Positions 106 through 15,250 of a stretch of 64,000 nucleotides of DNA are shown here, in pieces; within the stretch, counting starts at the first letter, position 1; the number at the start of each line of letters is the position of its first letter. The position numbers and the translations under genes were made by a program. The DNA is from Marsupella aquatica (lineage: Eukaryota; Plantae; Marchantiophyta). The DNA is taken from contig OZ316899.1 of NCBI GenBank assembly GCA_973895155.1, forward strand, positions 6,575,241 to 6,639,240, read 5' to 3'. The notes beneath the pieces are model-generated. The model was not told the origin of the DNA and searched no databases. It saw only the letters and a program-made list of their open reading frames with translations.

Positions 106-1463
106 ATGGAGGCTCCGCCTGAGCTGATAAGCAGGCTTAAATACCATAGTGAGGGGGAGAATTTCCCCAAAAGCCAAGAAGCTGGCCCTTTTGGCCACAC
201 AAATCATGATGTGCTACTGAACACCTCACAGACAAATGCATATAAGGCTTCTCCAAAGCCAAGGATAAGATCAAAAGCTCGTACAGCTCAGATCTGCTTT
301 GTAATTCAAGTACTGCGCTCACTGTATGGGCTGAAACAGAGCGGACGCACCTGGTATCAACGTTTTCAAGCAAAGATGATTGCAATGGGATTTACAAATG
401 CAGATGTTGCCCCATGCATATTCATTAAACGAGAAGGAAAAGAACTAATCATTATAGCAATATACGTCAATGATCTAAACTTGTTTGGCACTAGCAAGAT
501 AATGCTAGAAACAATCAAACTGCTCCAACGTATTTTTGAAATGCGAGATCTGGGAAAGACAACATTTTGTCTTGGCTTACAGTTCGAGCACTTACCTCAA
601 GGTATCCTTCTCCACCAATCTACATACACTCGAAAAATGCTCAAGACATTCAAAATGCTCACAGCAAAGAGTGTAAAATCTCCAATGGACCTGCGTTCAC
701 TGGATTGGAACAAAGATATTTTCCAAAAAAGAGAGGAGAACGAATCCCTACTGGGCTCGGAGAAGCCCTACCTATCTGCAATATGCGCCCTCATGTTCTT
801 GGCAAGCCAAACACGACCGGACATTGCATTTGCAGTGAACCTGCTAGCACGCCATAGCTCACAGCCCACAATACGACATTGGAATGGGCTTAAACGAATC
901 TTCCGCTATTTGAGTGGAACAATTGATCTTGGTTTACTCTACCCATCAGACATCGACATTACACTCTATGGTAATGCAGACGCAGGATACTTATCCGACC
1001 CTGTAGATGCAAAATCCCAGACAGGCTACGTATTTCTCACTGGACCTACAGCAATTTCTTGGAAGAGCACCAAGCAATCTCTCACTACAACATCATCTAA
1101 TCATTCAGAAATATTGCATTGTACGAAGCTAGCCGCGAATGCCTTTGGCTACGCACAGTAATAGACTACATTCTAGAAAACACAGGTATGTCGAAACTTA
1201 CTTCCCCCACTGTGATTTACGAAGACAATAGACCATGCGTCGAACAGATAGCCGCAAGATACATCAAAGGTGATAAAACGAAACATATTGCTCCAAAATT
1301 TTTATTTACATATGAACAGCAACATAAACAGATCGAAGTACAATGGATTCCCAGTAAACAGAACTCTGCCAACATATTCACAAAGGCTTTACCTCCTATC
1401 ACGCACAGTGAACTTACCAAAACTTTAGGGATGCGCAGCTTTACTTCACTCTTACAGGAATGA
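106..1463 (+). pseudogene. copia reverse transcriptase / RNase H, frameshifted
   Basis: ORFs 106-1161 and 1119-1463 join across a frameshift near 1115; catalytic YVDD is mutated to YVND. Confidence 0.9.
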
Positions 1464-1921
1464 TGAAGAAACAAGTTCAAGAACTCATTGAATTCAGGGG
1501 GAGAATACACACAAAACAACGACCGAGAACGAGGAACAACACAAAATAACGATCACCCTGGCCCTTACGACAAATACATTTTGACGCTGAAGCTGCATCA
1601 ATCTACTCCTGAATGCCGACTCTCGACCAAAGAACCCTACTTTTCTCAAGACAAAGAGCATTGAGAGAACGCGCGACCACATGCGAATGAACAATATTTT
1701 ACATAACTCTAGTTAACCTAGTAATACCAAAAGTAACCATAAAAGATCTCATTATTTTTACACTATACTCCTATATTCAAACTTCTTTTTTGGTTGGTAA
1801 CACTCTTTCTCCCAGAAGACAACAGGGGAGTTTTAATGAGGTTACACCAATTATAGATCAAAACCCAACATAGACTTAAAGTTATTGCAACACTTCTACC
1901 CAAAATGTTGCAAAGGGGGAG

Positions 1922-2099
1922 TGTTATAATACATAGGTTAAGTCTAGACTTGGGTTATCTGGACACCTAGGATTAAGTTACCTTAACCTTAGGTAACTGC
2001 TATAACTACCTAGACTTTGGCTTGAATCAACCACCATGTATATACTCCATTTGGAACTTGAAGGAAGAACACACTTATCATTGTATAATTACCTAAACA
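1922..2099 (+). repeat. copia 3' LTR (about 178 bp)
   Basis: Starts TGTTA right after the PPT ending at 1921 and ends AAACA; gypsy coding sequence follows immediately. Confidence 0.75.
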
Positions 2100-2520
2100 G
2101 TTTGCATAATTTCTGGACCAATGTTGCACCGGTTTGCTTACTACAATTGGCTCTAAAACATACGGTCAGGGACCCTACATTACAGGTGCACCAGATTTTG
2201 GATGCTAATAGCTCTTGTCAGCCCGTCACTCGGCAAGAGAGAGCACCTTGGTACCCTGCTAACACCATTGGGGAGCCAAGAGGTGCTTGGCCTACCTTTG
2301 TTTCGTTTCCTGGCGCCCATGCCTTCCAAGGGGATGGACCAGGGCTGGTCTACCGTCAGCTTTGGATACATGGGATGAGCCAAGCCCGGAGGAGCGAGAA
2401 CGAGCTATGGGTTTCCAAACTAGCACTACTGGTCATGTTAAAGTGACTAGGCTAGAGCGGAATTCTCTTCTTGGCATAGTCATGGATCTTAATTCTTTAA
2501 CATGGCTTTTGGTTACTTGT
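2100..2520 (+). pseudogene. C-terminal half of a C5 cytosine DNA methyltransferase (motifs VIII-X) within the gypsy polyprotein
   Basis: (R)LHNFWTN resembles motif VIII; EERERAMGF..STT (from 2389) resembles motif IX; ERNSLLGIVMD resembles motif X. One frameshift near 2355. The second frame runs on into the RT N-terminus (ORF 2287-2964). Confidence 0.75.
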
Positions 2521-2789
2521 ATTCTTTTCCAGATGCATACTGTTCCTACTATGGGTGACCCAGCCTCTCGCCTTAATGAAGTTCTTACCTGGCACCCTGA
2601 TGAAGTACATTTACCCATCCTCTCCACTCTACATTTCACTCCTAGTGTTGGGGGGGGAGAGGTACCCTGTAATGTGACTGAAATTTTGAAATCAGAGCAT
2701 GGCATGGACCAGATCACACCAGGCAAAGAGAAAAGCACATCAGGTTCTTCTAGTACACCCACTAGCTCTACGCCATGCGTTGCAAATTT

Positions 2790-5010
2790 CCAGTTTGTGA
2801 TGGGTAATCAGTTGAGTAAGAAGCAACGGGATCAGGTACTGAATTTGCTGTTGAGCTATGAAGATGTGTTTGCTTTCTCAATGAGAGACTTGGGCAAGTG
2901 CAAGGTGATGCAATTCTCCATTGAGCTGACCAATGAGAGACCTATTTATCTGCGGAGACACTAGTTGAGCAAGCATGAGTGGCAGCTGGTGGATGAGAGA
3001 TGCAAAGAGCTTTACAAGCAGGTCTGATCCAACCCTCCAACTCTGACTTTGCAGCGGCTACAGTGATGCCAGCAAAGAAAGATTCTAGTGGGCTATGGCG
3101 GATGTGCGGGGACTACAGGCCACTCAATCTGGTCACACCTCAAGATAGGTACCCCATGCCTATCGCTGAAGAGCTCTTTGACTCCATTGGAGATTCTGAT
3201 ATCTTTACCTCATAGACTTGAGGCAAGGCTTCAACCAGATCATTATTCGGGCTGAGGACCGTAAGAAGACAGCTTTTCATGGGAGCAATCGATTGTGGGA
3301 ATGGCTGGTGATGCCATTTGGACTGAAGAATGCACCCGTCTTCTTTCAACGGGTGATGGATCAAGTACTAGAAGGTGCTGATTTCCTAAAATGCTATATT
3401 GATGATACATTGAGCAAGGGTTTTGAGCAACACTTATTACATCTTGAAGAGTTGTTCAGGAGGCTGAGAAATGTTAATATGAAGATCCATCTCAAGAAGT
3501 GTGAGTTTGCTGTTACCTCAGTGGTTTACCTTGGGCATCGAATCATTCCAAATGGCACTATGGCTCATTGGGCTAAAGTGGTGTCTATTCTTGAGATGCC
3601 CAAGCCTACTGATACTCACACTTTGCGAAGCTTCATTGGTCTATGTAATTACTACAGAATTTACATCCAAGACTTTAGCATCATTGCTCACCCATTGTAC
3701 ATGTTGCTTAAAGTCAAAGTCAAATTCTAAGCTCCACAACGACCCAATGAGTCAAGGGAGCTGTGGCAAAAAAGCCAAATACAAAGCAAAGAAATGAGTC
3801 AAATGCTCATGTGAGGATCTCTACATGGTAATGGTAATGGTAATGGTAATGTATTATAAGCTCCGGGACCATGTTTAGGGTTTATTATCCTCACTAATAA
3901 CAAACTAAGGACCTTAAGAGTCACTAATGTGTAATGCTATCACATCATTTCCTATCCACTGCCATGATATACAATCCAAGTTGCTTTGGTGGCAACCTAA
4001 ATAGATCATGCAGATCAGAAACAAGGATTTGATGTGCTATTCAAATCTCCTCATACTGTCTACATGCTATGAATACATGATATTCATTCTCAATGCTGCC
4101 ACTATCACAGAGTCTACACACCCTATCCTGCCTCCTAATTCCCTTCCATCTACCCTCCTCTACCTCCAAGTGATGTGAGCTGAGTCTATATCTAGCAATC
4201 ACTTGTCTCAACCTCATAGAAATGGGAGCTCTAAGATACTCTTGTTCTTCATACAACATCATGGGGTTTACATCCCTCATAAAATACTGTAATCTAAGGC
4301 TAGGATCACTCCAAAGTTTTCTAATAGCTTTATCACGCAAGAGTGACCAAAGCTTCTTTGGTTGAGTATGCCATTCATGCTCAGATAAGTCCCATGATTG
4401 GGCCCAGCTACATACATCAGCATACCAACCAAAAGCAGCTCTAGAAGGATGTTACCTGGAAATGGACTGAAGACACTCAGGTGGCATTTGAAACTTTGAA
4501 GGGAAAGTTATCAAGTAACCCTGTTCTCAAAAGGCCTGATTTCAGCAAAACATTCATTTTGCATACAGATTGGAGTGCTAGGTATTGGTGCCATTATGGG
4601 TCAATCTGATGGGGACAGGCGGGAGTATGTCATTGCTTATGCGTCTAGGAGCAATAACAAGGCTGAGAGAAACTACTCCTCTTATGAAGGCGAATGCTTG
4701 GCTGTTGTGTGGGCTGTCAAACATTTCAGACCCTACCTGTATGGCACTAAGTTCATGCTCTTTACTGATCACCAGCCATTGAAGTGGTTGATTCTTGGAC
4801 CTTTCAACAAAAAGCACGCTTGAGGGAGAGGCAAAAAAATAGATTTGTTTGCTATATCCTCCGCCCACTTCCCCCGCGTTCGCGAAGCACTGAAAGGTGA
4901 CCAATGATAAGCTTACCGGCAAGCTAGCTCATTGGGCCCTCATTTTGCAAGAATATGAGTTTGAAGTTATTCATAGACCTGGAATTACTCACCAGAATGC
5001 TAACACCATG
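2790..5010 (+). pseudogene. gypsy reverse transcriptase and RNase H, disrupted
   Basis: ORF pieces 3000-3215, 3218-3730, 4575-4823 and 4897 onward; interrupted at 3711-4442 and 4792-4897. Confidence 0.9.
3711..4442 (-). mobile_element. 5'-truncated RTEX-like LINE, diverged family B with a (TTTGAC)n tail, carrying a ~48-bp family-A 3' tip at 3825-3873
   Basis: Encodes RLSSHHLEVEEGRW..CRLC..IENEYHVFIAC; removing it rejoins gypsy HPLYMLLK|KDVTWKW. Confidence 0.8.
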
Positions 5011-5299
5011 TCTCACAGTCCTTTGATCACTTCAACAGATTTTTCAGATGCACGGCAAGATTTTGATCATGCTAGTCCTAGCTCTACACTTGGGGCCTCT
5101 GCCTATCTTGCCTTGCTTTGTTGCAGCGTTGTTGACCAACCAATTGTGGACATCTGGGAGGATTTGGACACTCTGAATTTCTTGCAGCACAGACAGTACC
5201 CACCAGGCATGACCACTACTCAAAGGGATCGGATACAACAACGTTCTAAGCGTTACATGTGGAAGGGAGATCACCTAGTCCGCTATCTGTCACAAGGGG

Positions 5300-6332
5300 A
5301 GAGAGTGGTTGCACCAATTGCTGATAGGGCTGGCTTGGTCAAAAAAGTACATTCTGAACTTGGGCATTTTGGAATCAAGTGTACTTATAGTTTGATGGCT
5401 CTCTTCACTACCATTGGAAGGGGATGCATGCTCAAATTCTGGATATCATAGCTAGGTGTGAATAGTGTGACAGAGTAAGAACCTCATTCTCCTCTCAATA
5501 GCCTATACTTCATCCACTCTCTATTCAGGGATTGTTTTACCGCTGGTCTTGTGATTTAGCTGGAGAATTACCTTTGACATCTAAGGGTAACCTCTATATA
5601 ATGATCATGATTGAGCACTTTTCTAAGTGGATTGAATTGGTTGCCTTGCCTGATAAGAGTTCACATAGCACTAGCCAAGCTTTTCTCCAGCAAGTGCTTC
5701 GCAGGTTTGGGGCTTGTGCAGAGTGCCTCACTGACCAGGGCTCTGAATTTAAAGGAGAATTTCATGACCTACTTGACCATGCACTCATTGATCATTGTAG
5801 AACTTCAAGGGATCATCCTCAAGCGGATGGTCTAGCTGAGCGGATGGTACAGACCTGCAAACGAGGATTGTGGAAAATATGTCTCACCAAGAACAAGAAA
5901 GATTGGGACTTGGCACTGCCTTACATTGCCATGGGGTACCGCATGTCCAACCATGCCTCCTTGTCCAACTTCTCTCCTTATTTTCTACTTTTTGGTCGGC
6001 ATCCAATTCCTCCATCTTCTATTGCTTCTCAAATGCTTCAGGTGGTGGACTTGGACTCAACGGAAACCTGGTCTACTATCATATCAGAGAGGTTTGCCTT
6101 GTTCCGTAGAGTCATGCCTATGGCTATGGACAACCTAGCAATTGCCCAACATTGTGATACACTCAGATATGTGCACACACGGGGAGGGAGCTTTAAGGCC
6201 AAGGTGAGGCAGTTTGATGTGGGTGATTTTGTTTACCTTCAGCGCCAGCCTAGTGACACATTGGATACCTCCACCAGTCGCATTATTCTCAGGGTTAAGT
6301 GCATCTATCCTTCAGGTGTGTTGGAGTTATAG
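5300..6332 (+). pseudogene. gypsy integrase (decayed HHCC region and DDE core)
   Basis: VHSELGHFG, WSCDLAGELP, IEHFSKWIELVALP, TDQGSEFKGEF, DGLAERMVQ, FSPYFLLFGR. Confidence 0.9.
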
Positions 6333-6446
6333 GGAGCAGATGGTCGTACCCTCAAAGATCATGCTAAGAATTGTGCCCCTTGTCATTTGCCTAACTTGGA
6401 CCTTACCATTGTGACTTCTACTTGGATTCCTCCGGTGGATTATCCC

Positions 6447-6581
6447 TATAAGGTGTGTCACAGGATTGATGATGCTGACCAGATGTTGTTGTGTGACCAT
6501 TGCAACGGTGGTTACCATCTCTTTTGTTTGTGACCTGAGCTTCCACAAGTTCCGGAAGGGCTATGGTTCTGTCCTTCTTGT
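6447..6581 (+). pseudogene. PHD finger at the integrase C-terminus (absent from the ORF track)
   Basis: Same frame as integrase past TAG at 6330: (Y)KVCHRIDDADQMLLCDHCNGGYHLFCL*PELPQVPEGLWFCPSC, a C4HC3 pattern with the first Cys as TAT and a TGA at 6531. Confidence 0.85.
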
Positions 6582-6745
6582 TCTCCTTCACCAAGCTCAT
6601 CCTCAGCCCGTGTTGACCATTTCCATGCTCAGGTCTGGGGGGGGATACAGGGGTTACTTTCATGCCCCAACATTTCTTCATCTTGGTGTTAATGGACAAC
6701 CATGTATCATCTTTCTGGTTTTCTATTTTGTTGTGTACTTGGATG

Positions 6746-6849
6746 CATATGATACATGTCTCAATATCTTATGCTACCAACTCTATATGTCACGACACAT
6801 ATGATACATGTCTCGATATCTTATGCTACCGACTCTATATGTCACAACA
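6746..6849. repeat. 52-bp tandem duplication
   Basis: catatgatacatgtctcRatatcttatgctaccRactctatatgtcacRaca at 6746 and 6798. Confidence 0.85.
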
Positions 6850-7178
6850 TACTGAGACCAGTTTTTTTGTTGTGTCTTTTTTCAAACTTAATCATGTTTC
6901 AAATCTTTCCTTAGCTTTTTGAAGCATATGTTTCAGGGTCATTTTAGGTCACTAGCAATATTGGTGGCCTCACTAGCAAAACCAGTTTTCCTGTTTGCTT
7001 TTTACTGTTTGCTTGCATTGTTAAAACCCCCCTTGTATGAACTACTAGAACAAAGAACTGTTACATAATTGCTACCTTCCATCTCTTTAGGGATTAGTCA
7101 TGGATACAACTTCTCCAAATTCCATCTGAATCTTATGAGTTATAAACTAGACTATGTAGAGACCTAATAAAATGGTTG

Positions 7179-10100
7179 TGGTAATGGTAATGGTAATGGT
7201 AATGTATTATAAGCTCTGGGACCATGAAAGTCAAAGGAGCTGCCACAAAAAGTAAAGTACAATGCAATCAAAGAAAAGAGAAACCAAAAGAGATTGCTCA
7301 GAAGAGGACAACTATGTCCTCAAAGAAACTATGGACCTAGAGAGCCCTGAAAGATTTTCCAAACCTATTCTCCTTTCCCTATCCACCGCAAAGATATATC
7401 TTCCAAGTTGCTGAGGGGGCAGACCAAACAATGCATACAAATCTTTCACCAAGATTTGAGATGCCATCCTAACCCCCTCATAAAACTTGCAAGCAATGAA
7501 TACATGATATTCATTCTCTATACTAGAGCTATCACATAGTTGACAAACCCTCTTTTTCCTGTCAATATCCTTCCATCTCCCTTGTTCTACTTCAAGGTGG
7601 TGTGAGCTTAGTCTATACTGAGCAATAAGTTGTCTAAGTTGTACTGAGATAGTGCTAGATAAGTATTCTTGTTCTCGATATTTCTTCATGGGGTTCACAT
7701 CTCTCATGTAGTATTGCTGCCGTGGGCTAGGTTCATGCCAAAGTTTGTGCAAAGCCTTTTGCTCAAGTTTTGCTCTTAGCTTGGTTGGGTGTGTTGGCCA
7801 TTCATGTTCAGGAAAATCCCAAGCATGGGCCCACCTGCACACATCTGCATACCACCCTTTAGCTGAAGATGAGCGCAAGGCATGAAAAGGAAATCTGTTT
7901 TCCTCCAACTCTCTTACACGCATGATGTATTTGAGTGTGTGGAAGAGTGCCTCCACCTCCAAAGGAAACAAGCCTGCCTCTGCAAGTGTAAGTGCATATG
8001 GGGTTTGTGACTTGATCCTTGCTCCATCTCAAGAAATAGCTTTTGCAGCCCCTCAATCTGTTGCCACCCAGATTTAGACACACCTGCTCCCCAAATTGGT
8101 GCTCCATAAAGAATGACTGGTTTCACCAAAGCTCCAAAGAGATGTTTCCTTAACCTCCAAGTGTGTAGACCAGCTCTTTTGCATTTTTTCATGAATGCAT
8201 AAAAAGCTCTGTACCCATTGGCAGCCCTAGATTTTACACATGAGGCCCAACTCAAGTTTTGAGAGAACTCCACCCCAAGGTATTTGTAGGTCCTCACAAA
8301 TTCCACCAGATTCCCTTGGAAGTAGAGCTCTGGATTTTGTCGTGTGCCAATGCCCAAACACTTGGTCTTCTTGAGGTTGACTACCATCCCTGTTGCTTGA
8401 CAAAACTCCTCCAAGGCAGTGAGATGTCTTTGCAAAGCTTCTTGAGCATGAGCAAGTAGGACCACATCATCTGCAAATATAAGAAGTTGGAGGACAAACC
8501 TACCCAATTGAGTGCCAACTCCACCATGCTCCTCCAAAATGTTGTGTAGCTGATCAATGAAGATGCCAAAGAGAGTTGGTGAGAGAGGACAACCTTGGAT
8601 CACCCCAAGAGTGCTCCAGATTTCTTCAGAGGTTTCCTTTGAAAGTTTGATGCGCACTTCTTGGTACAATTTAGAAACAGCCAACCTGAGCTCTTCAGGC
8701 ACTTCCAACTCCACCATCCTATCCCAAAGCTTGGATCGGGAAACTTTGTCAAAGGCCTTGGAGAAGTCCACAAACAAGCAAAATAATGGTTTATGTGGAG
8801 ATTTGGCCTTTTCACACAACACCCTCAAGCAGAGAATGTGATCCATAGTGCTGAATTCTCTCCTAAAACCTGCTTGTGAAGGTGCCCTTTTCATCTCACT
8901 CTCCAACCAAGAGCTTAATCTGGCTTCAAGTAGTCCTCCCAAAACTTTAGCAAAAGTATTGCCTACCATGATGGTTCTGTAGTTGTGCACATCGTCCTTG
9001 TTGCCTGCCTTGAAGATAGGCACCACTCTTCTGGTCATCCAAGCTTTAGGTAAACCTAAAGCCATTGCTTGATTCAGCTCATGCACCAAGTTTGTTAGTA
9101 AAGAGGGTCCTCCCCACAAAAGAAGCTCCAAGTTCAGGCCCAACAGATCTTTAGCTTTCCCATGTTGCATGTGGGAAAGATGCACCTTCACCTCCCTCTC
9201 TGTAAACTGAATGGTGTCCCCAAGGGGCAAAGGCATGCCACTAGCATCTGGAAAGAAATACAAGGATGTGACATAGGTTACCAGGTCCTGGTGATCCAAG
9301 GGGGGAGTAGTCTTGCCTGATTGCATTCTCTCCCAAAAACGTTTTGGATGTTTGATGAACTCCTCACATAGTGATTGTTGATGACTCTTCAAGAAGCACC
9401 TCTTCTTGTGTTTGATGAAGTTCTTGTACATAGTGAATGCCAAAAGTCTCTTTTCCCCTGAATGTGATCTTGCTTGCATCCTTGCTCTAGCACAATCCTC
9501 GTCAAACCAAGCCTTCATGTTTTGCTTTCTAGGGGGTTTGGTGGAGAAAGTAGAGGCTGCTGCTTGTGCTATGACTTCTGAGAGCTCAATCTGATCATCC
9601 AGGGTATGGAGAAGATGTTCAAAGTTGGCTTTGAAGATGACTTCTCTATCAGGGTCTAGAAACAGAGGTTTGGGTACTGGCTTTCTATGCACTTTGTTTG
9701 GGATTGTGGTCAGGTCAAGATGGAACAACAAAGGCAAGTGTGAAGACTCTGGTTGTAGATCAAGTATTTGAAAGTCAACCACTCTAGTGGCAGAGGTAGG
9801 TGAGGCAAGAAGGTAATCAATGGTACTACATCCTTGTTTAGATCTAAAAGTGTAACCAGATGATTGGGGAAATCTCTCAAGCCCATTCAATATTCTTAGA
9901 TTACAAGAAGCTCCCAAATGCAAAAAGTGACGTGTCATGTCATTTGTTCTGGTGTCAAGAGCCTCTCTCACCCAAGGTATCTCTTCACTACATGATGACC
10001 AAGGTAAAGTTCCTAAGTCCTCACTTTCAGTAAATTGTTCATTAGATACCCTGGCATTAAAGTCCCCCACTATCCATGTCTCCCCTAGTGGTGATATATC

Positions 10101-10262
10101 ATGAATGACTTGGATTAACCTATGAAATGGATAATGTGCATCAGCAATTCCCATCTTATAGACATTCATATTAAGGGGAGCAAAGTAGGTGACAATCAGA
10201 AATGATGGAGTACCTCTGGTATGAAGTCTCACCACCATGAACTGCTTGCTGGGATGTGTTAG
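7179..10262 (-). mobile_element. RTEX-like LINE family A, 5'-truncated within the endonuclease; (TACCAT)n tail
   Basis: APE motifs VGDFNAR, STIDY, SSHLP; RT QGCPLSP and FADD; C-terminal RLSSHHL.VEQGR..CQLC..ENEYH...C; one frameshift near 8015; tail at 7179-7204. Confidence 0.9.
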
Positions 10263-12551
10263 GGAGTCTCCCAACGGTCTACTTTGTGACACTAAAATGT
10301 CACAAGTTAGTTGCTATTAACAAGGTTTGCAACGATTCTGAGGGCGACTAAGTCATCAAATTGACTTACCATATAACTACTTAGAGTCATATTACAATCA
10401 CGTATCGACAAGGCTAGACTCCATGACAGAGTCACATATCAGTCACAAATTAATGGGTATCAAGCGAGTCGTGATTATGATGACCTTGAACTAGTGCAGT
10501 AGAGAAAACAAACTTTGGGAGGAGAGGATCTCAAATCACCCTTTGTGTCACTAGTCGAACTAACAAGTCCTGGGTGAGGATTTAGAACAAAATTACTGCA
10601 TGTAATGGAGCGCAAACAAAGCCTCTACAATGCCATGACGAGAGTAGAAGACTAGAACGATTGGAGTCTTGCGGAAAGGAGCAGAGGAGCTTGAGTCTAA
10701 CAATGACCAAAATGGGGAGGATGCCGAACATCCGACTGAGATATCAAGGTCAGAACATCGGATCCTACCCAACGGTTTAGGGTTCCTGTCTTTTTGAGTG
10801 AGTATGATGACTTTCACGCTTGAAAATTGAGGTATAGGGTGCTTTGGAGTCTCACTTGGGACACACTCCCATGATGTTTGCATTGAAGGAGTTCAAGACC
10901 GTGAGTCCCAGTCCGTTACCATCCTGTCTGCCTCTGGTCATTCCAGTCCGCACACCGTTGTTTGTGGGAGATTGATGGGCTGCACTATGGCTAGGAATTT
11001 TGCTGGCCTGATGTACGTAGTCCTTTCAACTCTTTCGTGATTGTTTGTTGGATTCGGATGTTGAAAAGGGGGTACAGATCTTGAGTAATTATACGAATCC
11101 TCGGTTCAAATATGATGCTCATTAGTGGCCTTCTAGTGAGTCCAATACGTCACATGTACAAATGTACTGTTCAGGATAGGTTTTTTCAATCAATTGGACA
11201 CTGATAGTTATGTTTTGAAAAAGCTATGTTTTAGGCTAGCGAGGAAAATTTCATGACAAATTTTGGGTATTGGGAGGAGAAAATGTGCCTGTGCGAGGAA
11301 AATTTTTACTGTTTCCTCACATGCTACAATGACCCCAATTGTTACAAGAGTCACTTGCGTCAAGCTGTAGTTAGTCTTCCTTCTTGTCCAGATTCATTGC
11401 CAGTATTGAAAGGCACAAATCTTTTGAACCTGAAATTAACTGTCCTTGAAGAATAGTGTGTACAAGTCTTGAGTAGAGAGGATGGCTTTTATTGTTGCCC
11501 TTTGCCATTTGAACTGAGAATAATAAGCATTGATGTTTTCCCTGAAAAGGGAAAACATCAACTGGTGCAAATCAACATCCATTTTGAACTACAAATAATG
11601 GGCTCATGATCATCCCAAGGTCAAATCTCAGTCAAGAATACTATAAAAGGATTGATTCGAGTGTGAAAGAAACAATGACTCTCATCATGAATATGAAAGT
11701 TCCCTCTGGCAATTCTTACGGGATATAGTTCAAGATACGTGCACATCTCAAAAGGATATAGTTCAAGATCCAAAACACATGCACATCTCACAACAACAAA
11801 TATTTACTGGGTCCAGATTTGCATATTCCCCTGTTGCTTGTGTGAGGATTTTAATTGTCAATAGGAAGACCTTTCAATCCTTGTAATGGATTTACAACTC
11901 TTTCTTCAAGCTTGGTCTATTGAATTTGGTCCTCCCAAGCCAACTGTTCCTTATTGTTGGCAAAGTGCAAAACATCTTATGCATACAACGTTTATAGGAA
12001 GATTTTAGCATTTTCCTATATGTTCAACGCTTATTTCAATTTTTTTCACATTCATAACAGTAATCTCGGTAACGAATGATAATACCATCAAGTGAGTTTA
12101 GGTAGTGTCCAATGCTAGTAAACTTGTGCTACTATATGGCATGCTCATCCTGGAACATGCTTTACTTTTTGTGTGGTAGTGATATGTACGTGGACAAAAT
12201 TAGAGAGTGAAACTAGAATACATATTAAATGTGAATGGGATAAAATAATCCCCTTGTTAAAGTACATGCAAATAAAAATACATAAAGCACATAGTGACCA
12301 ATGGAAAGTACAATTACATTTTATGACACAAAGATGCTACGAGTTGTGCACTTACTTCAATGTGTCTTATTAATGACACCCATTTCAATAGAAACTATAA
12401 ACTTAAGAAAGAAAGTCACGAGGGGAACTTAAGACAGGATGTGTTTACATTACTTAGAATCATTCCTCTCACTCATGAGAATACTTAAAAGTGGTAGAAA
12501 ATGAAGCCCTTGGTTTCTCTCTAGGAGATAACAAAGTTTAAAAATTAAGGG

Positions 12552-14053
12552 GAAGAGCTCAGGTTGGCTGTTTCTAAATTGTACCAAGAAGTGCGCATCA
12601 AACTTTCAAAGGAAACCTCTGAAGAAATCTGGAGCACTCTTGGGGTGATCCAAGGTTGTCCTCTCTCACCAACCCTCTTTGGCATCTTCATTGATCAGCT
12701 ACACAACATTTTGGAGGAGCATGGTGGAGTTGGCACTCAATTGGGTAGGTTTGTCCTCCAACTTCTTATATTTGCAGATGATGTGGTCCTACTTGCTCAT
12801 GCTCAAGAAGCTTTGCAAAGACATCTCAATGCCTTGGAGGAGTTTTGTCAAGCAACAGGGATGGTAGTCAACCTCAAGAAGACCAAGTGTTTGGGCATTG
12901 GCACACGACAAAATCCAGAGCTCTACTTTCAAGGGAATCTGGTGGAATTTGTGAGGACCTACAAATACCTTGGGGTGGAGTTCTCTCAAAACTTGAGTTG
13001 GGCCTCATGTGTAAAATCTAGGGCTGCCAATGGGTACAGAGCTTTTTATGCATTCATGAACAAATGCAAAAGAGCTGGTCTACACACTTGGAGGTTAAGG
13101 AAACATCTCTTTGGAGCTTTGGTGAAACCAGTCATTCTTTATGGAGCACCAATTTGGGGAGCAGGTGTGTCTAAATCTGGGTGGCAACAGATTGAGGGGC
13201 TGCAAAAGCTATTTCTTGAGATGGAGCAAGGATCAAGTCACAAACCCCATATGCACTTACACTTGCAGAGGCAGGCTTGTTTCCTTTGGAGGTGGAGGCA
13301 CTCTTCCACACACTCAAATACATCATGCGTGTAAGAGAGTTGGAGGAAAACAGATTTCCTTTTCATGCCTTGCGCTCATCTTCAGCTAAAGGGTGGTATG
13401 CAGATGTGTGCAGGTGGGCCCATGCTTGGGATTTTCCTGAACATGAATGGCCAACACACCCAACCAAACTTGAGCAAAAGGCTTTGCACAAACTTTGGCA
13501 TGAACCTAGCCCATGGCAGCAATACTACATGAGAGATGTGAACCCCATGAAGAAGTATCGAGAACAAGAATACTTATCTAGCACTATCTCAGTACAACTT
13601 AGACAACTTATTGCTCAGTATAGACTAAGCTCACACCACCTTGAAGTAGAACAAGGGAGATGGAAGGATATTGACAGGAAAAAGAGGGTTTGTCAACTAT
13701 GTGATAGCTCTAGTATAGAGAATGAATATCATGTATTCATTGCTTGCAAGTTTTATGAGGGGGTTAGGATGACATCTCAAATCTTGGTGAAAGATTTGTA
13801 TGCATTGTTTGGTCTGCCCCCTCAGCAACTTGGAAGATATATCTTTGCGGTGGATAGGGAAAGGAGAATAGGTTTGGAAAGTCTTTCAGGGCTCTCTAGG
13901 TCCATAGTTTCTTTGAGGACATAGTTGTCCTCTTCTGAGCAATCTCTTTTGGTTTCTCTTTTCTTTGATTGCATTGTACTTTACTTTTTGTGGCAACTCC
14001 TTTGACTTTCATGGTCCCGGAGCTTATAATACATTACCATTACCATTACCATT
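12552..14053 (+). mobile_element. RTEX-like LINE family A, second 5'-truncated copy, inverted relative to 7179-8696
   Basis: Near-identical translation, same frameshift near 13230, a 12-bp deletion (TKLEQ versus TKLRAKLEQ), and a cattaccattaccattaccatt tail. Confidence 0.92.
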
Positions 14054-15250
14054 ATAGGATACAAAAAATTTAAAGGGGTCCAAAAATGAATGAAAAGTTT
14101 ATATGATACAAAGGATGCCCCTTGTTAAAGTACATTTAAATAAAAATACATGATACAAAAATATGAATAAGACAAAACATGAAAGTTGGATTCACAGAGG
14201 TGTCAAAAATTCCAATTTAGATAGTGCCCAATGCTAGTAAACTTGTACTACTATAATACGTGACATTTTTACATATTGTAGTGGCGCAGTTTGAATCCTA
14301 TTGGTATTTCTGTCCTAAATTGGGATCTTCTTTTTGGTGGCGAGCACAAAGACTCCTGTTTTCTGAGGCCACTTCTTGTTGTTTTAAGAATTCCTGTTTA
14401 CTCATAACTCATGTCAACAGCTAAGTTAGATGTTATGTCTAACTCATCTAAGTTTCACAACTAACCGCTGAATTGCTTCAAAACAAGCCTTCAGAATTGC
14501 TTATAGTTGGAGTTTGATGTTTCTTCGAAACACACTGCCTTAAGATAATAAGTTAATTCACTTAAAGGACAAAGCAAATTCTTTCAAGAGGAATCTATTT
14601 ACATATTTCGATAATTTGTCTGTTCTCACATAAGATGTGATATATTAAAATTATGACCCTTCCATACTAAGCCCCTAACTAATTTCTGGAAGCTCCCTGG
14701 AGAGCAAGTAACTCTGCTACACGTGTACATTAGACACAACTTACTACTTTTATTTATTTTTAAGAATCAGGAAAATAGACGAGAAGGTTCTTTATCATCA
14801 TACCCATGCCAAAGGTTCGACTCCTGTCAATGTGTAATATTCTGTGAAGAAATAGAAGCTCTTGAAAAGAATGTGAATTGTCTTGAATAAAAGACACCCC
14901 TGAGAAAAACGATTTTGCGTTGGGAGCTTAGATTACTCTCATTTAAGTTAGGAACTGCAACCATTTACACTACGCAAGGAGGCAGATAATTTTCCAATCA
15001 TAGAGCCTTCAGGGTCAACTAGTACCTGCCTTCCTAAATTCTGCCTTAATACTAGGAGGAATTAGAAACAATTGCTGAGAAGATGTTCCCAATAAGCTGG
15101 TGGCTTCTAATACCAGCTGTCATAAAAAACCTACATCTGCGTCTAAACCACATGAGGGTCTTCCTATTGGAACACAACGAAGACAGCTTCCACAATACAC
15201 TCAGCCATTTGTATTGGAACACAAAGCAGACAGCTTCCAGAATAGTACAC

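What the first reader, a model, noticed from the sequence alone, without database searches (positions are those of the whole stretch)
2100..6581. Ty3/gypsy retrotransposon encoding its own cytosine methyltransferase and a PHD histone reader
Seen: directly upstream of RT, and joined to it apart from one frameshift, is LHNFWTN...WPTFVSFPGAHAF...EERERAMGFQTSTT...ERNSLLGIVMD. An in-frame C4HC3 finger follows integrase. Known: this spacing matches C5-MTase motifs VIII, IX and X (compare DNMT3 RARYFWGN / E.ER.FGF...YT / R.RLLG). From memory, DNMT-bearing retrotransposons have been reported in dinoflagellates and a charophyte alga, but they are not a standard land-plant element. Inference: this family combines a methylation writer and a chromatin reader in one polyprotein, so it could methylate its own cDNA and choose integration chromatin. 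Only the C-terminal half of the MTase is in the window and this copy is dead.
Basis: partly seen in the sequence, partly recalled or inferred. Interest (0 to 1): 0.9.

Follow-up and report, generated by a model that had tools for sequence, protein, structure and literature searches.

The report
Dead Gypsy-DNMT3 retrotransposon copy with PHD
This is a broken, front-truncated copy of a jumping gene whose family carries its own DNMT3-type DNA-methylating enzyme and a histone-reading PHD finger; the family was described in a freshwater alga in 2018 and is shown here to be abundant in mosses and liverworts too.

Summary
Window 2100-6581 is a decayed Ty3/gypsy pol. It reads DNMT C-terminal part (end of motif VIII, target-recognition region, motifs IX and X), then RT, RNase H, integrase and an in-frame PHD finger.

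The window pieces alone hit no methylase profile. Their homologues carry PF00145 upstream and RVT_1 downstream. An 847-aa open frame in a peat-moss metagenome contig joins a complete DNMT to RT. A family profile hits human DNMT3A at E 1.6e-25.

The order PR-DNMT-RT-RH-IN-PHD recurs in all 80 fetched loci wherever the contig reaches. It is also found in Marchantia and in Klebsormidium nitens, the alga where Gypsy-DNMT3 was published in 2018. The alga's copy already has a perfect PHD, so the writer-plus-reader pairing is old, though the paper never mentions it.

DNMT and PHD evolve under constraint like RT and integrase. The window copy is dead: cut at its 5' side beside a copia element, five stops, at least five frameshifts, two insertions.

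Methyltransferase activity is unproven. The alga's domain gave no methylation in yeast, and the moss-type lineage has Glu-Cys instead of Pro-Cys in motif IV.

Verdict: new member of a known kind. This scan already found the family elsewhere in this genome.

The parts
106..1463 (+). Context: Ty1/copia pol (RVT_2), cut by the window start. This element bounds the gypsy fragment on its 5' side.
   Evidence: Pfam RVT_2 E 5.6e-23; ORFs.
1922..2099 (+). Context: copia 3' LTR after a purine tract at 1911-1921. Its end lies somewhere between 2084 and 2099.
   Evidence: Sequence read. Contigs of other runs start at 1922 and end at 2084, and gypsy-type contigs start at 2101 (table 8).
2100..2511 (+). 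C-terminal ~140 residues of a DNMT3-like C5 methyltransferase: end of motif VIII (LHNFWTN), target-recognition region, motif IX (ERERAMGF) and motif X (LLG..MDLNSLTW). Frame 2 changes to frame 1 at a frameshift between 2356 and 2359.
   Evidence: 74% (2087-2356) and 62% (2359-3018) amino-acid identity to the open DNMT-RT frame of L006. Homologues carry PF00145. The family profile hits DNMT3A at E 1.6e-25.
2512..2790 (+). Poorly conserved linker between DNMT and RT.
   Evidence: dN 0.418 against L006, versus about 0.12 in the domains.
2791..3710 (+). Reverse transcriptase: stop at 2962, frameshifts near 3014 and 3208, and small deletions including two residues just after the YxDD box.
   Evidence: Pfam RVT_1 E 3.1e-21; 82-88% identity to L006; stop position.
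3711..4442 (-). Nested fragment of the 3' end of a LINE, absent from sibling copies.
   Evidence: blastn to 7375-7857 and 13391-13861. Contigs of three runs join 3710 directly to 4443 (table 5).
4443..4791 (+). RNase H domain, with a frameshift near 4577.
   Evidence: Pfam RT_RNaseH E 6e-28; table 4.
4792..4897 (.). 106-bp insertion absent from sibling copies.
   Evidence: Joint 4791 to 4898 in contigs of three runs (table 5).
4898..6329 (+). Integrase: H2C2 zinc finger and rve core. Frameshift near 5398; stops at 5463 and 5499.
   Evidence: Pfam Integrase_H2C2 and rve; 79% identity to L006; stops.
6330..6581 (+). Integrase C-terminal extension ending in a PHD finger (6456-6581). Stops at 6330 and 6531; the second Cys is lost.
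   Evidence: PF00628 E 6.9e-6. 46% identity over 83 residues to the PHD region of L004, E 2.7e-23.
6582..7170 (+). 3' non-coding tail of the element with a G-run at 6636-6645 and a 52-bp tandem duplication (6746-6849). Its repeat structure and true end were not determined. It is bounded by the tail of a minus-strand LINE from 7171.
   Evidence: Only 6620-6649 matches the tails of L006 and L011; TRF result; sequence.

Best explanation
Window 2100 to about 7170 is a dead copy of a Gypsy-DNMT3 LTR retrotransposon, truncated at its 5' side. The family's single polyprotein reads gag, protease, a DNMT3-type cytosine-5 methyltransferase, RT, RNase H, integrase and a C-terminal PHD finger. In this copy everything upstream of the end of DNMT motif VIII is missing from the window, because a copia element abuts it. 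The rest is broken by five stops, at least five frameshifts and two insertions. What is shown: the homology, the DNMT3 class, the fixed domain order across green algae and bryophytes, and purifying selection on DNMT and PHD equal to that on RT and integrase. What is inferred (my odds about 0.3 each): (a) the DNMT, made beside RT, methylates the element's newly made cDNA or the chromatin at its landing site; (b) the PHD, fused to integrase where chromoviruses carry a chromodomain, tethers integration to nucleosomes with unmethylated H3K4, which is the coupling that the ADD domain gives animal DNMT3.
For: Homologues of window residues 27-85 of the 2287-2961 ORF carry PF00145 upstream and RVT_1 downstream. 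L006:9197-11737 is one 847-aa open frame holding PF00145 (E 2e-9), RVT_1 and RNase H. The window is 62-88% identical to it. In the PDB, a single family member hits DNMT3A at E 3.7e-8. The family profile gives DNMT3A 1.6e-25, then DNMT3B and 3C, then DRM 1e-14, then M.HhaI 3e-9. The order PR-DNMT-RT/RH-IN-PHD holds in 80 of 80 metagenome loci as far as each contig reaches. It also holds in L004, Marchantia L086 and Klebsormidium L085. Motifs I, IV, VI and VIII are conserved in the copies. Between the window and L006, dS is saturated, dN is 0.127 for DNMT, 0.122 for RT, 0.121 for IN and 0.163 for PHD, against 0.418 for the linker. Among 74 copies, median dN/dS is 0.39-0.42 for DNMT, 0.35 for RT-RH and 0.61 for the linker. 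The nearest solved relatives of the PHD are CHD4, KDM5 PHD1, ATXR5, PHF21A/BHC80, BAZ2A/B, WSTF, AIRE and UHRF1. From memory these mostly read unmodified H3. No ING/BPTF/TAF3-type K4me3 reader is among the hits listed.
Against: The window pieces alone hit neither PF00145 nor any solved methylase. The catalytic half is outside the window. Every fetched moss-type copy is decayed; the longest ORF is 847 aa. The moss-type lineage has Glu-Cys, not Pro-Cys, in motif IV and ENT, not ENV, in motif VI. The K. nitens Gypsy DNMT domain gave no detectable methylation in yeast, a result its authors call inconclusive (PMC5890265). No RNA run holding this stretch was found. The PHD specificity rests on class resemblance only.
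Confidence: 0.85

Rival explanations
1. The DNMT module is conserved but is no longer a DNA cytosine methyltransferase in the moss-type lineage. It would then serve as a DNA- or RNA-binding or structural module of the polyprotein, or act on another substrate.
For: Motif IV reads Glu-Cys instead of the near-universal Pro-Cys, and motif VI reads ENT, in most of the 80 copies. The K. nitens domain showed no methylation in yeast. The 2018 authors themselves consider RNA substrates for the LINE-borne DNMT.
Against: The catalytic Cys, the motif VI Glu, the motif I glycines and the RxR of motif VIII are all kept. Constraint on the DNMT equals that on RT. Marchantia, K. nitens and P0125 keep Pro-Cys and ENV. 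The yeast negative is inconclusive because human DNMT3B also failed there.
Confidence: 0.25
2. The PHD finger does not steer integration. It would instead regulate or position the DNMT, as the ADD domain gates animal DNMT3A, or recruit host chromatin factors after integration.
For: DNMT and PHD co-occur in two different domain orders (PR-DNMT-RT... and RT-RH-DNMT-IN-PHD). This suggests the pair, not its position, is what is kept. The class of the PHD is that of H3K4me0 readers.
Against: In every architecture seen the PHD sits directly at the integrase C-terminus. That is the place where chromodomains are known to target integration (Gao et al. 2008, as cited in PMC6673714). One full-length DNMT element, P0155, has no PHD at all.
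Confidence: 0.3
3. The methylase-like peptide is a fragment of a host DNMT3 gene that lies next to an unrelated gypsy RT by chance or by nested insertion.
For: Only the C-terminal half is present, and the region is full of nested insertions.
Against: The same ORF (2287-2964) runs from motif IX into RT. An uninterrupted DNMT-RT frame exists in L006. More than 540 stretches in metagenomes share the junction, and 80 of 80 fetched loci share the domain order.
Confidence: 0.01

Closest known systems
KnitGypsy-Dnmt3 of Klebsormidium nitens (de Mendoza et al. 2018, PMC5890265)
   Same: A DNMT3-type domain sits inside the pol of a Gypsy element and is under purifying selection. The K. nitens protein KFL_000540020 is a direct homologue (E 6e-29 to L006; tblastn to the window 1.8e-13). 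The order DNMT-RT-RH-IN-PHD is the same, and a 161-bp direct repeat (one pair only) lies after the PHD.
   Different: The host here is a bryophyte-type genome, not a charophyte alga. Amino-acid identity in the DNMT is only about 31-34%. The moss-type lineage has Glu-Cys and ENT where the alga has Pro-Cys and ENV. The paper does not mention the PHD finger in its text or in the supplements held.
SymbioDIRS-Dnmt3 and SymbioLINE-Dnmt of Symbiodinium (same paper)
   Same: Retrotransposons that carry a DNMT. The DIRS-borne DNMT3 methylates CG de novo in yeast.
   Different: They are unrelated retrotransposon classes and independent captures. No integrase-PHD is present.
Chromoviruses (Ty3/gypsy with a chromodomain at the integrase C-terminus)
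   Same: A histone-tail reader is fused to the integrase C-terminus. In chromoviruses it directs integration to heterochromatin (Gao et al. 2008, cited in PMC6673714).
   Different: No chromodomain hit was found on the integrase or PHD pieces.
Animal DNMT3A/3B/3C
   Same: These are the best solved relatives of the family's DNMT (E 1.6e-25). They share the motif VIII-IX-X pattern and spacing. A zinc-finger H3 reader is coupled to the enzyme (ADD there, PHD here).
   Different: They are host genes with PWWP and ADD domains N-terminal to the enzyme.
PHD-bearing retrotransposons such as REM1 of Chlamydomonas (Perez-Alegre et al. 2005; Kapitonov and Jurka 2003, as cited in PMC6673714)
   Same: A PHD finger encoded by a retrotransposon is a known feature.
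   Different: Those reports do not couple it to a DNMT. I did not compare sequences with REM1.
EpiLTRs (bioRxiv 10.64898/2026.05.21.726589)
   Same: LTR elements that combine methyltransferases with a chromatin-targeting domain.
   Different: They carry a DNMT4-related enzyme plus an adenine methylase and a chromodomain. They occur in other protist lineages and have an independent origin.

Membership tests
C5 cytosine methyltransferase, DNMT3 class | Profile match to PF00145 above the curated cut-off | tested here: inconclusive
   The window pieces give no hit, which is expected because PF00145 matched family members only over their N-terminal motifs. The close relative L006 scores 37.8 bits against a cut-off of 22. 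L004, P0111, P0155, Marchantia and Calypogeia proteins also pass.
C5 cytosine methyltransferase, DNMT3 class | Motifs I (FxGxG), IV (Pro-Cys) and VI (ENV) in this copy | not testable with these tools
   They would lie upstream of 2100, beyond the copia element and the window start.
C5 cytosine methyltransferase, DNMT3 class | Motifs I, IV and VI in family members | tested here: met
   Census of about 80 copies: motif I LFGGIGTG, motif IV with the catalytic Cys present, motif VI with Glu present. Caveat: the moss type has Glu-Cys and ENT. Marchantia, K. nitens and P0125 have Pro-Cys and ENV.
C5 cytosine methyltransferase, DNMT3 class | Motifs VIII (RxR..W.N), IX (E.ER..GF) and X (LLG) in DNMT3 order and spacing | tested here: met
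   The window has LHNFWTN, ERERAMGF and LLGIVMD. HMMER aligns the family's IX-X block to the DNMT3A C-terminus, colinear with motifs I-VIII.
C5 cytosine methyltransferase, DNMT3 class | Nearest solved relatives are DNMT3 rather than DNMT1, DNMT2 or bacterial enzymes | tested here: met
   DNMT3A 1.6e-25, then DRM 1e-14, then M.HhaI 3e-9, then DNMT2 1e-8.
C5 cytosine methyltransferase, DNMT3 class | Methyl transfer to DNA | not testable with these tools
   The only published test of a Gypsy-DNMT3 domain (K. nitens, in yeast) was negative and inconclusive.
Gypsy-DNMT3 retrotransposons (KnitGypsy-Dnmt3 type) | DNMT inside pol between protease and RT, in one frame with RT | tested here: met
   The window ORF 2287-2964 spans motif IX to RT. 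L006 holds an open DNMT-RT frame. The order holds in 80 of 80 loci.
Gypsy-DNMT3 retrotransposons (KnitGypsy-Dnmt3 type) | Sequence homology to the K. nitens element | tested here: met
   P0203 [Klebsormidium nitens] gives E 6e-29 to L006 and tblastn 1.8e-13 to window 2114-3018. Locus L085 has the same domain order.
Gypsy-DNMT3 retrotransposons (KnitGypsy-Dnmt3 type) | DIRS/Ngaro-like split direct repeats (A ... B-A-B) instead of plain LTRs | tested here: inconclusive
   Seen in L006, L011 and Marchantia L086. In K. nitens L085 only one 161-bp pair is seen. In the window the 5' end is missing, and the tail 6582-7170 shows no recognisable B-A-B.
Ty3/gypsy (Metaviridae) | RT, RNase H and integrase in that order, with gypsy-type profiles | tested here: met
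   RVT_1, RT_RNaseH, Integrase_H2C2 and rve in order.
PHD finger (PF00628) | C4HC3 zinc ligands and a profile hit above the cut-off | tested here: met
   26.4 bits against a cut-off of 24. Seven of eight ligands are kept, with one internal stop. Relatives reach E 3e-10 to 8e-12, and K. nitens has all eight ligands.
Chromovirus | Chromodomain at the integrase C-terminus | tested here: not met
   No chromodomain hit at E<=1 on 5532-6329 or 6387-6530. A PHD occupies that place.

The most novel reading that the evidence does not exclude
The DNMT3-plus-PHD pair is an ancient, selected writer-reader module of a Gypsy clade that spans chlorophytes, charophytes and bryophytes. It is kept even when the DNMT changes place in pol. 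The PHD reads unmethylated H3K4 and so gives the element the same targeting logic that ADD gives animal DNMT3. New copies would then land in, or create, methylated H3K4-free chromatin, shaping their own epigenetic state rather than merely suffering host silencing.
Probability: 0.2. Interest if true: 0.75.

Novelty: new member of a known kind. Interest (0 to 1): 0.45.

Why it matters
DNA methylation is the host's main weapon against transposons, so a transposon lineage that keeps its own de novo methyltransferase under selection is a standing puzzle. So far the Gypsy case rested on one alga. I found no paper reporting it in land plants.

This work shows three things:
- The same lineage is very abundant in peat-moss-associated DNA and is present in the model liverwort Marchantia, where genetics and methylomes are available.
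- It always travels with an integrase-fused PHD finger.
- Natural Pro-Cys and Glu-Cys variants of the catalytic loop exist.

That makes the open question of what the enzyme does for the element testable in tractable plants. The copy in this window adds nothing beyond being one more dead member, and the scan had already flagged the family elsewhere in this genome.

Tried and rejected
- Pfam on the window's own DNMT-like pieces gave nothing, apart from a sub-threshold DUF5527 hit.
- phmmer of those pieces against PDB sequences gave nothing real. The 'SAKe' hits are summed weak matches to designed kelch repeats.
- No second copy of the element exists in the window.
- The first alignment (A1) was too loose for the locus search. 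A tighter one (A2) worked.
- Long ORFs: none of the 80 metagenome loci is intact. The Marchantia copy I examined is three ORFs with a truncated PHD, so it is not fully intact.
- The organism could not be named. Run organisms are coded. The LINE ORF's best named relative is Calypogeia fissa at 61%, and the gypsy's is Sphagnum at 79-83%. I therefore say only 'bryophyte-type'.
- No RNA run holding this stretch was found.
- No DNMT tree was built, because no host DNMT3 or DRM sequences were available as files for an outgroup.
- The tail 6582-7170 could not be matched to the split repeats of relatives.
- Literature searches for land-plant Gypsy-DNMT3 or the Marchantia gene ids found nothing.
Full report
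**What is in the window**

LHNFWTN lies at 2102-2122 and WPTFVSFPGAHAF at 2288-2326, both in frame 2. EERERAMGFQTSTT lies at 2389-2430 and ERNSLLGIVMD at 2455-2487, both in frame 1.

The frame-1 ORF 2287-2964 continues without interruption into the N-terminal part of a reverse transcriptase. Pfam then finds:
- RVT_1 at 3218-3727;
- RNase H at 4481-4820;
- the integrase zinc finger within 4897-5448;
- rve at 5532-6329;
- a PHD finger in the ORF 6387-6530, at 26.4 bits against a cut-off of 24.

The PHD is in the integrase frame.

**State of this copy**

- Upstream, a Ty1/copia pol (106-1463, RVT_2) and its 3' LTR (about 1922-2099) abut the element. Only the last ~140 residues of the methylase-like domain are in the window.
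- A LINE 3' fragment is nested at 3711-4442.
- 106 extra bases sit at 4792-4897.
- There are in-frame stops at 2962, 5463, 5499, 6330 and 6531.
- There are frame changes near 2357, 3014, 3208, 4577 and 5398.

Contigs of sibling copies in four public runs were laid on 1500-7400. They show small length differences at exactly those five places. They join 3710 to 4443 and 4791 to 4898 directly. They also differ at the stops at 2962, 6330 and 6531, so these defects are private to this copy.

The PHD has also lost its second cysteine through a three-residue deletion relative to the peat-moss relative. I give no repaired reading of the element.

**Is the upstream peptide a methyltransferase?**

Alone it hits nothing in Pfam or among solved structures. 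An exhaustive phmmer of the 225-aa ORF against 1.84 billion representatives gave 143 hits.

The hits that extend upstream carry PF00145, and those that extend downstream carry RVT_1. Examples:
- P0111 and P0155 read zinc knuckle, aspartyl protease, DNA_methylase, RT, RNase H, integrase.
- Closterium proteins read DNA_methylase then RVT_1.

A scan of JGI metagenomes with a family alignment found at least 540 related stretches. In one of them, L006:9197-11737, a single 847-aa open frame holds PF00145 (E 2e-9), RVT_1 and RNase H.

The window is 74% identical to that frame over 2087-2356 and 62% over 2359-3018. Identity is 82-88% in RT and 79% over integrase plus PHD.

The L006 domain hits only DNMT3A, 3B and 3C among solved structures (best E 3.7e-8). 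A 21-sequence family profile gives:

| Solved relative | E-value |
|---|---|
| DNMT3A | 1.6e-25 |
| DRM | 1e-14 |
| M.HhaI | 3e-9 |
| DNMT2 | 1e-8 |

So window 2100-2511 is the end of motif VIII, the target-recognition region, and motifs IX and X of a DNMT3-type enzyme.

**Is the linkage constant?**

I ran tblastn of five domain probes against the 80 fetched loci. It gives the order protease, DNMT N-half, the query segment, RT/RNase H, integrase, PHD in every locus as far as its contig reaches.

An independent, more distant element (L004, ENA) has protease, PF00145 (E 7e-9), RT, RNase H, integrase and PHD (E 3e-10), with two frameshifts. Its PHD region is 46% identical to the window's (E 2.7e-23).

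A search with names places relatives in:
- Sphagnum magellanicum and S. fallax;
- the liverworts Calypogeia fissa and Marchantia polymorpha (Mp_8g17980 and two others);
- Closterium;
- Klebsormidium nitens (KFL_000540020);
- the chlorophytes Chromochloris and Monoraphidium.

The K. nitens locus reads DNMT, RT, RNase H, integrase and a perfect C4HC3 PHD (E 8e-12). The Marchantia locus has three long ORFs and a PHD cut short.

**Family anatomy**

*Motifs.* The moss type reads LFGGIGTG (I), SGWECQGFS (IV), VIENT (VI) and AHRLRNWWTN (VIII). Marchantia, K. nitens and P0125 keep Pro-Cys and ENV. L004, Closterium and P0155 have Glu-Cys with ENV.

*Terminal repeats.* They are split direct repeats (A ... 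B-A-B) in L006, L011 and Marchantia. This fits the 2018 figure legend that calls the K. nitens repeat structure DIRS-like. In the K. nitens locus itself only one 161-bp pair was seen.

*Selection.* Both comparisons point to constraint on the DNMT and PHD.

| Region | dN, window vs L006 | Median dN/dS, 74 decayed copies |
|---|---|---|
| DNMT | 0.127 | 0.39 (N-half), 0.42 (C-half) |
| RT / RT-RNase H | 0.122 | 0.35 |
| Integrase | 0.121 | not computed |
| PHD region | 0.163 | not computed |
| Linker | 0.418 | 0.61 |

Between the window copy and L006, synonymous sites are saturated. The dN/dS values are upper bounds, because dead copies drift. The DNMT and the PHD were therefore kept by selection while the lineage was active.

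**Mechanism**

None of it is shown. The 2018 paper found that a DIRS-borne DNMT3 methylates CG in yeast. The K. nitens Gypsy domain gave no signal, which its authors call inconclusive because human DNMT3B also failed. They propose methylation of the newly made cDNA.

The nearest solved relatives of the PHD are CHD4, KDM5 PHD1, ATXR5, PHF21A/BHC80, BAZ2A/B, WSTF, AIRE and UHRF1. From my memory of the literature these mostly read the unmodified H3 tail.

The PHD's place at the integrase C-terminus is where chromoviruses carry the chromodomain that targets integration. I therefore favour a writer made beside RT plus an integrase-tethered reader of H3K4-unmethylated chromatin, at modest odds.

The main rival is that the Glu-Cys lineages have lost methyl transfer.

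**Known or new**

Gypsy-DNMT3 is published for K. nitens (PMC5890265) and is cited since as a streptophyte feature. PHD fingers in retrotransposons are also known.

I found no paper on land-plant members, on the DNMT-PHD pairing, or on the Marchantia genes.

Earlier notes of this scan report the same family elsewhere in this genome, with the same reading. My results agree with them. One difference: the Marchantia copy I looked at is not fully intact.

The copy in this window is a dead, partial member, so I class it as a new member of a known kind.

**Limits**

- The organism is coded in the runs tool, and its TE proteins have no near-identical named match. I call it bryophyte-type only.

Noticed in passing
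P0194 (Chromochloris zofingiensis), P0185, P0130: A second architecture exists in which the DNMT sits between RNase H and integrase (RT-RH-DNMT-IN-PHD). P0194 has an added G-patch and P0185 a Tudor domain after the PHD. The DNMT-PHD pairing survives a change of position in pol.
   Followed up: partly
L005-L084, L004, L085, L086 (DNMT motif IV): The catalytic loop reads Glu-Cys instead of Pro-Cys in the peat-moss type, L003/L004, Closterium and P0155. Marchantia, K. nitens and P0125 keep Pro-Cys. The moss type also has ENT for ENV.
   Followed up: partly
L006 4835-5126, 13506-14159; L011; L086 5007-5299, 17139-17662; L085 5945-6651: The elements end in split direct repeats (A at the 5' end, B-A-B at the 3' end) like Ngaro or DIRS-type elements, not plain LTRs.
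   Followed up: partly
L086 and L087 (Marchantia polymorpha GCA_003032435.1, scaffolds KZ772727.1 and KZ772702.1): The identical 1248-aa product and identical domain coordinates occur at two places on different scaffolds. This points to recent duplication or transposition of a copy that already has a stop and a frame change.
   Followed up: no
window 7171-10292 (-), 3711-4442 (-), 13391-14054 (-): A LINE family with a 792-aa RT/endonuclease ORF (7914-10292) and an (AATGGT)n tail at 7171-7204. Fragments of the same family lie inside the gypsy RT and near 13.4-14.0 kb. The best named relative is Calypogeia fissa at 61%.
   Followed up: partly
window 106-2099 (+): A Ty1/copia element (RVT_2 pol, short 3' LTR of about 170 bp) abuts the gypsy fragment. 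Its 5' half lies before the window.
   Followed up: partly
L005-L084, motif VIII and IV columns; window 1500-7400 against sibling contigs: Decay of the copies is dominated by transitions. Arg codons in motif VIII turn to His, Cys, Trp, Gln or stop, and Trp and Gln codons turn to stops. In the laid contigs A/G and C/T changes far outnumber transversions, as expected for methylated repeats.
   Followed up: no
window 6746-6849: A 52-bp unit is duplicated in tandem (94% match) in the element's 3' non-coding tail.
   Followed up: no
P0155 (ENA metagenome, 2138 aa): A full-length open gag-PR-DNMT-RT-RH-IN polyprotein with no PHD at its C-terminus. The PHD is therefore not universal among DNMT-bearing Gypsy elements.
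   Followed up: partly
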